This document shows, piece by piece, positions 17,661 through 36,466 of a stretch of 64,000 nt of DNA (positions are counted from its first letter, which is position 1; every line of letters begins with the position of its first letter). Below the pieces are notes generated by a model, which did not search any database, was not told the origin of the DNA, and was given only the letters and a program-made list of their open reading frames with translations. Source of the DNA: Sminthopsis crassicaudata. Its lineage: Eukaryota. The position numbers were made by a program, and so were the translations under genes. The stretch is taken from assembly GCF_048593235.1 (NCBI RefSeq), contig NC_133622.1, forward strand, positions 239,041,198-239,105,197, read 5' to 3'.

Positions 17661-17701
17661 GCTGTATTTGTATGATTTTGAAATTCTCTCCACAAGAAAT
17701 T

Positions 17702-18646
17702 ATGATGAAAGCTAACCAAAATCAGAGTGCTACCGTGATCTTCATCCTCTTAGGATTCTCTGATTATCCAGATCTCCAAATACCCCTCTTCCTGGTGTTC
17801 CTGGCCATCTATATGGTGACTGTGGTGGGAAATTTGGGCATGATTGTGATCATAAGATGCAATCCTAAACTCCACACTCCAATGTATTTTTTCCTCAGTC
17901 ACTTGTCTTTTATAGATTTCTGTTACTCCACTATAGTTACACCCAAATTTTTAGAAATCTTAGTTGTGGAAGATAGAAGTGTCTCATTCATTGGCTGCAT
18001 CATGCAATTTTCTTTTGCTGTTACTTGTGTGGTGACAGAGATGTTCATGTTGGCCGTCATGGCCTATGATCGGTTTGTAGCCATTTGTAATCCTTTACTA
18101 TATACAGTTACTATGTCCCAAAAACTTTGCACTCTTCTGGTCACCATATCATATTCTTGGGGCCTAATTTCTTGTGTGGTCTTTACTTACTCTCTCCTTA
18201 TTTTGTCTTTTTGTGGGATTAACATCATCAATAATATACTCTGTGAGTATTCTGCCATCTTTTCTGCTTCCTACTCTGATAAACACTTGACTGAGGTACT
18301 TCTTTTTAGTCTTTCAAATTTTAATACCTTTTGTACTCTTACCATTATACTTACCTCCTATCTCTTTATTTTTGTAACTATCATGAAAATGCCTTCAACC
18401 AGTGGAAGGCATAAGGCCTTCTCTACCTGTGCCTCTCACTTGACCGCTGTTACCATTTTCTTTGGGACTATCTTGTGCCTCTACTGTGTGCCCAGTTCCA
18501 AAAGCTCATGGCTCATAATCAGAGTGAGCACTGTTTTTTATACAGTAGTGATTCCCATGTTGAATCCACTAATATACAGTCTCAGGAACAAAGACGTAAA
18601 GGAAACATTCATGAAATTAATGAATATGAAATTATTCTCCCACTAA
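17702..18646 (+). CDS. Olfactory receptor, OR5D-like (resembles OR5D13), intact, 314 aa
   Basis: Single-exon 7TM ORF with NQS glycosylation site, [33 protein letters not shown] and [12 protein letters not shown]. The start at 17702 is preferred over 17672 by homology with the paralogs. Confidence 0.96.
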
Positions 18647-27759: not shown

Positions 27760-28704
27760 ATGATGACTGAAGACAGAAATCAAAGTACTGATGTCATATT
27801 CATCCTTCTAGGATTCTCTGATTACCCAGATCTCCAAGTTCCCCTCTTCCTTCTATTTCTGGTTATCTATGTGGTCACAGTGATGGGAAATTTGGGCATG
27901 ATTATGATCATCAAGATCAACTCTAAACTCCACACCCCCATGTATTTTTTCCTTAGTCACTTATCTTTTGTGGATTTCTGTTACTCCACTGGAGTTACAC
28001 CCAAACTCTTAGAAAACCTAATTGTGGAAGACAGAAAGATTTCTTTTGGAAGCTGTATCACACAGTACTTTTTCACAGCTACTAGTGTGTTGGCTGAAGC
28101 TTTCTTGTTAGCAGTAATGGCCTATGATCGTTTTGTAGCTATATGTAATCCCCTTTTGTACATGGTTATTATGTCTCGGAAACGATGCATGGTGCTAGTG
28201 ACTGGGGCATATGTTTGGGGCATAAGTTCTTCCCTTATATTTACCTATTCTCTTATTAGATTATCTTTTTGTGGGACTAACATCATTAATAATTTTCTTT
28301 GTGAGTATTCTGTCATCCTCTCTGCCTCTTGTTCAGATAGACACATTAGTGAAATGATACTTTTCATCCTTGCTAATTTTAATGTCTTGAGCACCCTCAC
28401 AACCATTCTCACATCATATATTTTAATTTTTGTCACTATCTTAAAGATGCAGTCGGCCAGTGGGAGACACAAAGCCTTCTCCACCTGTGCTTCCCATCTG
28501 ACTGTCATCTCCATCTTTTATGGGACCCTGCTCTTTCTCTATTGTGTCCCCAGTTCTAAAAACTCATGGCTCATAATTAAAGTGACTTCTGTTTTTTACA
28601 CAGTGGTCATTCCTATGTTGAATCCCTTAATATACAGTCTTAGGAACAAAGATGTGAAAGAAGCTGTCAGGAAACTAATGGACACCAAAATATGTTCTTT
28701 CTAA
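27760..28704 (+). CDS. Olfactory receptor, OR5D-like, intact, 314 aa
   Basis: All OR motifs are intact ([40 protein letters not shown]). Kozak context accATG. Confidence 0.97.
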
Positions 28705-35351: not shown

Positions 35352-35470
35352 AATAATGATGATGATGATGATGATGATGACTTGTTTTTGCAATTGGGGT
35401 TAAGTGACTTGCCTAGGGTTACACAGTTAGGTGTCTGAGGCCAGATTTGAACTTAGGTCCTTCTAACTTT
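35352..35470 (-). mobile_element. SINE fragment with (ATC)n tail, specific to U1
   Basis: caattggggttaagtgacttgcc...gccagatttgaac is WSINE/MIR-like and absent at the paralogous site in U2. Confidence 0.65.
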
Positions 35471-35808
35471 ATGTACTTTGCTATTATAACTGTAATTATT
35501 ATTAATTATTTTGTCTTGACCTCTAATTTCTTTTGTATAAACAAATTTCATTGTGAAATCAACTTTTTCCAAAATATATTGACCCTTGTCCTGTTACTTG
35601 GAATGTTAATGAATTGCAGTTAAGCAATTGTTCCAGGGTCAAAGATTAGTATAGGTCAGAGAGAAGATAAGAATCTAGAACTTTCTGACTTCAAGCCTGA
35701 CCTTTTATCTATTAGAAAATATTGGCTTTCATAGCAGAAACATGCAATTTCTTTAAATGTTCTTTGATTGTCATCATTTATTTTAGACAACCTTCATCTC
35801 ATTACCTA

Positions 35809-36400
35809 CCGTGTTTCCCCGATAATAAGACACTGTCTTATTATTTTTTTGGGACTAAAAAACACCAGAGGGCTTATTTTCAGGGGAGGGCTTATTTTAT
35901 CCTCCATCATGCCCCTTTTATCCTCCATCATGCCCATTTTAGCCTCCATCATGCCCCTTTTATCCTCCATCATGCCCATTTTAGCCTCCATCATGCCCCT
36001 TTTAGCCTCCATCATGCCCCCTGAGTGCTTATTTTATTCTCCATCGCTTACTGAACTTACCGAGTTTTTAGATGGTCCTGTCTCAGCTCTACTCCGCGGC
36101 GCTGCTCTCAGTAGCGCCAGCAAGCAAATCACCAGGGAAGAAGAGGATGACGCGCTCACTGCTGCAGCTCTGATTGGATGCAGCTCGGAGCGCGACGTGC
36201 GTTTCACCCGGGAGGGGAGGGCAGCGCTGCTTACTGAAGGTACCGCTACGCAGCATATAGCGCAGGGGATCACCATGATGACCGTTTTCATAGTAAGTTC
36301 GATAGGGCTTATTTTCGGGGGAGGGCTTATTTTAGCGGAATATTAAAGAGTATGTGGGTGTCTTATTTTCAGGATAGGTCTTATTATCGGGGAAACACGG
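35809..36400. mobile_element. Tc1/mariner-superfamily MITE (Tc2/pogo-like), 592 bp
   Basis: Perfect 23-bp TIRs CCGTGTTTCCCCGATAATAAGAC and a TA TSD (35807-35808, 36401-36402). No transposase. Absent from U2 and U3. Confidence 0.93.
35899..36021. repeat. 21-bp minisatellite, about 6 copies, inside the MITE
   Basis: Unit a(t/g)cctccatcatgccc(c/a)tttt. Confidence 0.97.
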
Positions 36401-36404
36401 TATG

Positions 36405-36434
36405 TCCTTTTCATTGTACTATTCTTCTTTGCAG
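36405..36434 (+). promoter_or_regulatory. Splice acceptor of the OR coding exon, conserved in U1-U3
   Basis: ttcttctttgcAG|gattta. Paralogous AG at 45895-45896 and 56675-56676. Confidence 0.7.
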
Positions 36435-36466
36435 GATTTATATTTAAAATTCTTTCAAATTTAGCC

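What the first reader, a model, noticed from the sequence alone, without database searches (positions are those of the whole stretch)
35807..36402. Young, CpG-rich Tc2/pogo-like MITE, possibly an undescribed horizontally acquired family
The 592-bp element has perfect 23-bp TIRs and a TA TSD. It also has repeated CTTATT(T/A) motifs, including a direct repeat GGGCTTATTTTC(A/G)GGGGAGGGCTTATTTTA at 35870 and 36305, likely transposase-binding sites. I count about 22 intact CpGs in 36021-36340, whereas the rest of the window is strongly CpG-depleted. It is absent from both paralogous sites. Perfect TIRs and undecayed CpG imply recent insertion and a sequence that did not evolve long in a methylating marsupial germline. 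Recent DNA transposon activity in mammals is rare and usually traced to horizontal transfer. I cannot assign it to a named family.
Basis: partly seen in the sequence, partly recalled or inferred. Interest (0 to 1): 0.75.

Follow-up and report, generated by a model that had tools for sequence, protein, structure and literature searches.

The report
Young pogo-type MITE beside olfactory gene
A 592-base non-coding "jumping gene" of the pogo (Tc2/Passer) type sits just upstream of an olfactory-receptor gene in a marsupial; the copy matches its family's majority sequence and an uninterrupted version of the site exists in sequencing data, which points to DNA-transposon activity far more recent than is usual in mammals.

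Summary
Window 35809-36400 is a 592-bp insert with perfect 23-bp terminal inverted repeats and a TA duplication. Its core has CpG o/e 0.97, against 0.087 for the rest of the window. Two paralogous sites lack it, base for base.

It is a non-autonomous element of the pogo superfamily, Tc2/"Passer" lineage. A metagenome contig (L003) has the same TIR (22/23) and the same 100-bp end layout, followed by a 431-aa HTH_Tnp_Tc5 + DDE_1, DD35D transposase. An intact relative occurs in a marsupial (sugar glider). Its nearest named kin are in a bat (82%) and a lizard (79%), and the tree disagrees with host phylogeny.

In the window's species the element reaches depths of 10^5, against about 40-120 on most of the flank, so thousands of copies. 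No base of this copy differs from the family majority. Contigs from two samples join the flanks cleanly without the element, so the insertion is probably polymorphic.

I could not check Dfam or Repbase.

This scan had already flagged and followed up the same family elsewhere in this genome (s1-153318).

Verdict: a real, very young, new member of a known kind.

The parts
35807..35808 (.). Left copy of the TA target-site duplication
   Evidence: the paralogs have a single dinucleotide here, and the lengths match exactly once the element and one TA are removed.
35809..35831 (+). Left 23-bp terminal inverted repeat. It contains the first ATAAGAC box.
   Evidence: perfect match, 0 expected by chance. 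It is identical to the commonest TIR of 81 metagenome MITEs.
35809..35899 (+). Left subterminal region, the 3' end in the transposase's orientation. Boxes lie at 35836-35842 (GTCTTAT), 35871-35877 and 35889-35895 (GGCTTAT).
   Evidence: blastn matches to about 100 metagenome elements over bases 1-90. Alignment A3. Boxes are 0.83 conserved against 0.56 for spacers. Family variants diverge exactly after 35899 (loose ends).
35895..36020 (.). 21-bp minisatellite, 6 units
   Evidence: TRF, 93% matches. Variants without the array are seen in organism B (loose end at 35903).
36021..36301 (.). CpG-rich internal core. It is non-coding and specific to the marsupial family. About 36084-36227 is shared with subfamilies in organisms B and C.
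   Evidence: CpG o/e 0.97. No similarity to the metagenome elements. No transposase trace by tblastn. No credible ORF. No Rfam hit. Depth profile.
36302..36400 (-). Right subterminal region, the 5' end in the transposase's orientation. Four ATAAG(A/C)C boxes on the minus strand lie at 36306-36312, 36324-36330, 36360-36366 and 36378-36384.
   Evidence: It aligns at 80.6% with the TIR-proximal 100 bp upstream of the L003 transposase ORF. Boxes are 0.97 conserved against 0.52 for spacers.
36378..36400 (-). Right 23-bp terminal inverted repeat
36401..36402 (.). Right copy of the TA target-site duplication
   Evidence: The empty-site contigs join 35806 to 36401 with 2 shared letters.
36420..36434 (+). 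Polypyrimidine tract and AG (tattcttctttgcag). This is an inferred splice acceptor of the olfactory-receptor coding exon, with its AG 32-33 bp downstream of the insert.
   Evidence: Read from the sequence. The stretch is strongly conserved in both paralogs. Inferred, not shown.
36467..37399 (+). Intact olfactory-receptor ORF (310 aa). Its ATG is 66 bp downstream of the insert.
   Evidence: Pfam 7tm_4, E = 1.7e-43.

Best explanation
This is a miniature, non-autonomous cut-and-paste DNA transposon of the pogo superfamily, in the lineage called TC2 (Dupeyron 2020) or Passer (Gao 2020). It encodes nothing. It keeps only about 91 bp at one end and 99 bp at the other of an autonomous element. Those ends carry the 23-bp TIR plus three further ATAAG(A/C)C boxes per end at fixed spacing, which I infer to be binding sites for the transposase's HTH domains. 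A DD35D transposase supplied in trans would cut the element out at its TIRs and reinsert it at a TA, which is duplicated. This copy landed in the intron or 5' leader of an olfactory-receptor gene, about 32 bp upstream of the likely splice acceptor and 66 bp upstream of the ATG. That happened after the local receptor genes duplicated. It was recent enough that none of its bases differs from the family majority, its CpGs have not decayed in a genome with CpG o/e 0.09, and an allele without it is still present. The family has thousands of copies in this marsupial, with related subfamilies in other species. It most likely descends from a horizontally introduced transposon.
For: Shown here:
- Anatomy and precise insertion.
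- No coding capacity.
- L003 carries TA, then a TIR matching 22 of 23 bases, then the same box layout, then a 431-aa ORF with HTH_Tnp_Tc5 (1.7e-13) and DDE_1 (8.8e-21).
- DD35D is present in L003, the sugar-glider protein, and the lizard, bat and spider relatives.
- 81 paired MITEs in metagenome contigs have TA/TA flanks in 54 of 81 cases, and their commonest TIR is identical to this one.
- Boxes are conserved and spacers are not.
- Summed depth on the element is 1e5-5e5, against about 40-120 on most of the flank, in two samples of the window's species. No position differs from the family majority. Loose ends at the element boundary are many and AT-rich. A clean joint 35806->36401 appears in two samples from two studies, on a haplotype marked by a TTC deletion at 36422.
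- The transposase tree disagrees with host phylogeny: the marsupial groups with a rhinolophid bat, lizard, snake, frogs and a nematode, while the pipistrelle groups with Xenopus (identities).
Against:
- The marsupial transposase I found is named only for Petaurus, and the window's species is a different, unnamed marsupial.
- The empty-site evidence rests on one short contig per run, with 28+2 letters on one side, below the tool's 31-letter bridging rule. A near-identical duplicated locus could mimic an allele.
- Copy number from summed contig depth is only an order of magnitude.
- Binding of the boxes is inferred from conservation alone.
Confidence: 0.85

Rival explanations
1. It is an old family inherited vertically and already in standard repeat libraries. 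This copy only looks young, for example because gene conversion or its location shields its CpGs.
For: Related subfamilies sharing the termini and part of the core exist at high depth in at least two other organisms. So the family as a whole is older than this one species. I could not query Dfam or Repbase.
Against: CpG o/e is 0.97 against 0.087 around it. There are zero majority differences over 592 bp, and a clean empty site appears in two samples. The insert is absent from paralogs that are only 82% identical to its flanks. The pogo survey I read found this lineage in mammals only in bats and afrotherians (PMC7386202).
Confidence: 0.07
2. It belongs to another TA-targeting Tc1/mariner family (mariner or Tc1 proper), and a non-pogo transposase moves it. 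On this reading the TIR match to L003 is convergence.
For: A TA duplication and short TIRs are common to the whole IS630-Tc1-mariner group.
Against: The match to L003 is not limited to the TIR. It covers about 100 bp with four boxes at the same spacing, 80.6% identical. A related MITE (L029) still carries the C-terminal remnant of this same transposase, in the orientation predicted.
Confidence: 0.04
3. It is an assembly or contamination artefact: foreign or misplaced sequence put into the olfactory-receptor cluster.
For: The composition is foreign to its surroundings. A contig without the insert exists.
Against: There is an exact TA duplication at a site that matches the paralogs base for base. 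Left-flank contigs of two independent samples end exactly at 35808, as expected where a repeat or allele branch begins. The element is present at 1e5 or greater depth in all runs of this species.
Confidence: 0.02

Closest known systems
Passer family of the pogo superfamily (Gao et al. 2020, PMC7386202), which is the TC2 clade 39 of Dupeyron et al. 2020 (PMC7325037)
   Same: The partner-type transposase has HTH_Tnp_Tc5 + DDE_1 and DD35D, and is about 430 aa. NCBI names its relatives 'pogo transposable element with KRAB domain'. The host list (spider Stegodyphus, leech Helobdella, fish, snake, lizard, frogs, bats) matches the published patchy range. The TSD is TA.
   Different: Gao et al. found Passer in mammals only in Chiroptera and Afrotheria. 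Here the lineage is in marsupials, as a MITE family of thousands of copies with a marsupial-specific CpG-rich core and a 21-bp minisatellite.
Recently active DNA transposons of vesper bats, including Tc2-type elements and their MITEs (Ray et al. 2008; that paper was not held, so this rests on my own knowledge and on PMC3342881 and PMC4971623 as listed)
   Same: A mammalian genome with very young cut-and-paste elements of horizontal origin. The nearest named transposases to the marsupial one are from bats (Rhinolophus 82%, Pipistrellus 75%).
   Different: The host is in a different mammalian infraclass. I could not compare TIRs with the bat elements, because no bat DNA was available in these tools.
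MITE family with the identical 23-bp TIR in ascidian-like host contigs of JGI metagenomes (L001-L120)
   Same: The TIR is identical, the TSD is TA, the two ends show the same asymmetric box layout (72-80% identity over 90-100 bp), and both are non-autonomous.
   Different: The internal sequence is unrelated. They are shorter, mostly 350-430 bp. The host genome is not CpG-depleted, and its PIG-F gene is closest to Ciona and Clavelina. The end identity is too low to argue for a direct recent transfer.
OC1/SPIN hAT transposons, the classic horizontally transferred DNA transposons of marsupials (PMC4408412)
   Same: DNA transposons in marsupials that look young and came from horizontal transfer, mostly present as MITEs.
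   Different: hAT elements make 8-bp duplications and have different TIRs and a different transposase. This element makes a TA duplication and pairs with a pogo DD35D enzyme.

Membership tests
IS630-Tc1-mariner/pogo group MITE | TA target-site duplication | tested here: met
   TA lies on both sides. The paralogous empty sites and the empty-site contigs have one dinucleotide there.
IS630-Tc1-mariner/pogo group MITE | Terminal inverted repeats bounding a short non-coding, multi-copy element | tested here: met
   Perfect 23-bp TIRs. No ORF or transposase trace. Depth of 1e5-5e5, against about 40-120 on most of the flank.
pogo superfamily, Passer/TC2 lineage | An autonomous element with the same termini encodes an HTH_Tnp_Tc5 + DDE_1 transposase | tested here: met
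   L003 has a TIR matching 22 of 23 bases and about 100 bp of shared end architecture, followed by a 431-aa ORF with both domains. L003 is a metagenome contig, not from this genome.
pogo superfamily, Passer/TC2 lineage | DD35D catalytic triad | tested here: met
   D174/D278/D314 in L003's protein and D175/D279/D315 in P0006, with a spacing of 35. The same holds in the lizard, bat, snake and spider relatives.
pogo superfamily, Passer/TC2 lineage | A partner transposase gene with these TIRs present in the same genome | not testable with these tools
There is no copy in the window. An earlier agent of this scan reports one (s1-153318), which I did not verify. Family variants that share only the termini exist in the reads (loose ends at 35899 and 36302).
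hAT (OC1, SPIN) | 8-bp target-site duplication | tested here: not met
   The duplication is 2 bp, TA.
piggyBac | TTAA target-site duplication | tested here: not met
   The flanks read ...ACCTA / TATGT... and contain no TTAA.

The most novel reading that the evidence does not exclude
The family is still transposing in living populations of this marsupial. The signs are insertions identical to the family majority, a segregating empty allele at this locus, and an intact DD35D transposase in marsupials. That would make a marsupial one of the very few mammals outside vesper bats with a currently active cut-and-paste DNA transposon. It would come from a pogo lineage not previously reported in Metatheria, and it would be creating new alleles next to olfactory-receptor genes.
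Probability: 0.4. Interest if true: 0.8.

Novelty: new member of a known kind. Interest (0 to 1): 0.55.

Why it matters
In most mammals, cut-and-paste DNA transposons have been dead for tens of millions of years. Bats are the main known exception. A family of thousands of copies with copies matching the family majority and a probable presence/absence polymorphism would put a marsupial on that short list. It would extend the host range of the horizontally spreading Passer/TC2 pogo lineage. It would also supply natural material, a MITE with mapped ends and a candidate intact transposase, for studying how a methylating mammalian germline handles a fresh invader. Locally, the insert puts a CpG-rich 0.6-kb block about 32 bp from the splice acceptor of an olfactory-receptor gene, so it may act as a regulatory or splicing variant.

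Tried and rejected
- Rfam scan of 35700-36500 at E<=1: nothing. The core is not a known RNA gene.
- Full-text search for the TIR letters: only chance primer matches.
- TIR pattern in IMG/VR viral contigs and in bacterial/archaeal genomes: 0 hits.
- tblastn-style scans for the marsupial-type transposase in viral and bacterial collections: none. So no viral vector or contaminant contig was found.
- tblastn of two transposases against the window: no trace. The core is therefore not a deleted coding region.
- ORFs inside the element, including a 192-aa frame and the in-frame 7-aa minisatellite, have no support.
I could not fetch the orthologous or allelic olfactory-receptor locus, nor the DNA around the Logan transposases.
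- Gentles 2007 and Ray 2008 are not held.
- I considered that the window's species is the sugar glider because of P0080. I rejected this as unproven: the glider has its own separate entry in the receptor cluster, and the window's chromosome is a different record.
- The loose-end sequences do not translate to the P0006 termini, so they could not be used to tie that protein to this family.

Full report
**1. Observation**

Window 35809-36400 is a 592-bp block bounded by a perfect 23-bp inverted repeat. The repeat occurs nowhere else in the 64 kb, and none is expected by chance. TA lies on each side.

Inside the block, from left to right:
- a left subterminal region with CTTAT-type motifs;
- a 21-bp tandem array of six units at 35895-36020;
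- a core with GC 53%, 22 CpGs and CpG o/e 0.97;
- a right subterminal region with four motifs 18 bp apart in pairs.

The rest of the window has GC 32.5% and CpG o/e 0.087. No other 320-bp stretch approaches this CpG count.

The window holds five tandem olfactory-receptor units about 10 kb apart. Alignment of this unit with the two most similar ones shows a clean 594-bp gap in both. After removal of the element and one TA, the lengths agree exactly.

**2. What it is**

The element has no coding capacity. No Pfam-like ORF is present, tblastn finds no trace of the relevant transposases, and Rfam gives no hit.

A scan of public collections with a 21-base TIR pattern gave:
- nothing in viral contigs;
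- nothing in bacterial genomes;
- at least 120 contigs in JGI metagenomes.

One of the metagenome contigs, L003, reads TA, then the TIR (22 of 23 bases identical), then repeated AAATAAGAC/AAATAAGCC boxes, then a 431-aa ORF. The ORF has HTH_Tnp_Tc5 (E = 1.7e-13) and DDE_1 (E = 8.8e-21). The first 100 bp of L003 align with the reverse complement of the window's right end at about 80%, with four ATAAG(A/C)C boxes at the same spacing.

The window element is therefore a deletion-type derivative of a pogo transposon, lying in reverse orientation relative to the transposase. A related MITE, L029, still carries the last 65 codons of the transposase in the orientation this predicts.

The transposase has a DD35D triad and a single Tc5-type HTH. 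Its relatives carry the NCBI name 'pogo transposable element with KRAB domain'. This matches the Passer family of Gao et al. (PMC7386202). It also matches the TC2 clade of Dupeyron et al., whose host list (Stegodyphus, Helobdella, fish, snake) recurs among my hits (PMC7325037).

**3. The ends**

The other 119 metagenome loci carry small elements. I paired 81 of them:
- most are 350-430 bp long;
- TA/TA flanks occur in 54 of 81;
- TA occurs at 151 of 182 single ends;
- the commonest TIR is identical to the window's.

They resemble the window element only over bases 1-90 and 495-592, at 72-80% identity, and not at all inside.

Within those ends, the window's identity to the others is:

| Region | Right end | Left end |
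|---|---|---|
| Boxes | 0.97 | 0.83 |
| Spacers between boxes | 0.52 | 0.56 |

(alignments A2 and A3).

The two ends are not mirror images beyond the TIR. The left end carries its inner boxes in the opposite orientation, and this asymmetry is shared by the marsupial and metagenome elements.

The host of most of these contigs is not CpG-depleted (o/e about 0.8-1.0). It carries animal genes, and its PIG-F gene is closest to Ciona (46%) and Clavelina (42%). The host is therefore probably an ascidian.

**4. The family in the window's species**

Runs of 'organism A' (five studies) hold 62-95% of the element's sampled words. Six other coded organisms hold 12-21%.

I laid contigs of two samples of A and one each of B and C on 35400-36466. 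The results were:
- (a) Summed depth is 1e5-5e5 over the element, against about 40-120 on most of the flank, which indicates thousands of copies to an order of magnitude.
- (b) No position of the element differs from the family majority in A at the 10% level, so this copy matches the majority sequence.
- (c) B and C are equally deep on the termini and on about 36084-36227. They are empty on 36048-36083 and 36228-36299, and they share six fixed differences. These are sister subfamilies.
- (d) Loose ends just outside 35807 are numerous, AT-rich and mutually unlike, which means many insertion sites with the same boundary.
- (e) Some family members share only 35809-35899 and 36302-36400 and then continue into other sequence. 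These are candidates for the autonomous element, but they are unproven.

**5. Age and polymorphism**

In both samples of A, one contig joins 35806 directly to 36401 with no letters between. Its right flank is identical to the window except for one missing TTC unit at 36422. Its left side is 28+2 letters long, which is the k-1 overlap expected where an allele-specific path leaves a shared flank. The left-flank contigs of both samples stop exactly at 35808.

In sample X2 the empty-site contig has about half the depth of the shared flank (21 against 39). This is what a heterozygous, clean pre-insertion allele looks like, and there is no excision footprint. A near-identical duplicated locus is the alternative I cannot exclude with contigs alone.

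Together with the intact CpGs and the zero differences from the family majority, this places the insertion very recently. As a rough inference from 0 of 592 differences, I put it within about the last one to two million years, and plausibly still segregating.

**6. Origin**

A Logan protein, P0006 (432 aa, intact DD35D), shares a 90% cluster with an NCBI protein of the sugar glider Petaurus breviceps. In that gene model a SCAN exon is joined to the transposase.

P0006's identity to its named relatives is:
- 82% to a Rhinolophus copy;
- 79% to Zootoca;
- 75% to Pipistrellus;
- 74% to the Stegodyphus spider, Xenopus and Ranitomeya;
- 72% to Crotalus;
- 62% to L003.

In a tree of 37 transposases, the marsupial pair sits in a short-branched, well-supported (95) clade. 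That clade also holds the bats, lizard, snake, frogs and a Trichuris nematode. The pipistrelle groups with Xenopus rather than with the other bat. This pattern disagrees with host phylogeny and argues for repeated horizontal transfer of the lineage.

The window's genome is a marsupial. Its receptor protein clusters at 90% with proteins of wallaby, devil, wombat, brushtail possum, Gracilinanus and glider. So I have not shown which transposase serves this family in this genome.

An earlier agent of this scan, working on another copy in the same genome (s1-153318), reports thousands of copies and an intact transposase whose nearest named kin are in a bat and a lizard. My independent results agree with that, but the last link remains its claim, not my result.

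**7. Local context**

The insert lies 66 bp upstream of the ATG of an intact 310-aa receptor ORF (7tm_4). It is about 32 bp upstream of a conserved pyrimidine tract plus AG that looks like the acceptor of the coding exon. An effect on splicing or transcription is possible but untested.

**8. Comparison and novelty**

The mechanism is ordinary: trans-mobilised cut-and-paste at TA. The family is a known one (pogo, Passer/TC2). Three things are not in the literature I could read:
- this lineage in marsupials. Gao et al. list only bats and afrotherians among mammals, and a 2023 survey of horizontally transferred DNA transposons found only a hAT in Monodelphis;
- such recent activity;
- the marsupial-specific CpG-rich core.

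I could not consult Dfam or Repbase, so 'undescribed' stays open. I rate it a new member of a known kind, of real interest to transposon biologists. This scan had already flagged it at other loci.

**9. Limits**

The single run search and the single read-laying run were used as described.

Noticed in passing
L001-L120 (JGI metagenome contigs Ga0210059, JGI24021J15306, JGI24022J15233, JGI24158J21664, JGI24159J19872 and others): These metagenomes hold long eukaryotic contigs (up to 68 kb, GC about 0.40, CpG o/e about 0.8-1.0) full of 350-430-bp MITEs with the identical 23-bp TIR. A PIG-F gene on L013 is closest to Ciona and Clavelina, so the host is probably an ascidian.
   Followed up: partly
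L029:392-1002: This 610-bp MITE keeps the last ~65 codons of the pogo transposase on its minus strand (tblastn E = 3e-10). It is a direct example of a MITE arising by internal deletion in this lineage.
   Followed up: partly
P0080, P0016, P0011, P0013 (proteins): Gene models in sugar glider (SCAN exon + transposase), an unnamed metaclust entry (SCAN), Pipistrellus (DnaJC17 + transposase) and Rhinolophus (R3HDM1 + transposase) fuse host exons to this transposase. They could be annotation chimeras or exonised young insertions.
   Followed up: no
window 35400-35471: This stretch belongs to another very high-copy repeat, SINE-like, with summed depth up to 1e6-2e6 in all four runs, including organisms B and C.
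   Followed up: no
window 17672-18646, 27760-28704, 36467-37399, 46207-46860, 56917-57639: Five tandem olfactory-receptor units lie about 10 kb apart. Three have full-length ORFs (310-324 aa). The last two have only 217-240-aa ORFs and may be pseudogenes.
   Followed up: no
window 36422-36424: A TTC/TTC-TTC length variant in the pyrimidine tract of the putative splice acceptor marks the haplotype that lacks the MITE.
   Followed up: partly
window 35895-36020: On the minus strand the 21-bp minisatellite is in frame (7-aa repeat, 69-aa ATG ORF). Copy number varies among family members, and some subfamilies lack the array.
   Followed up: partly
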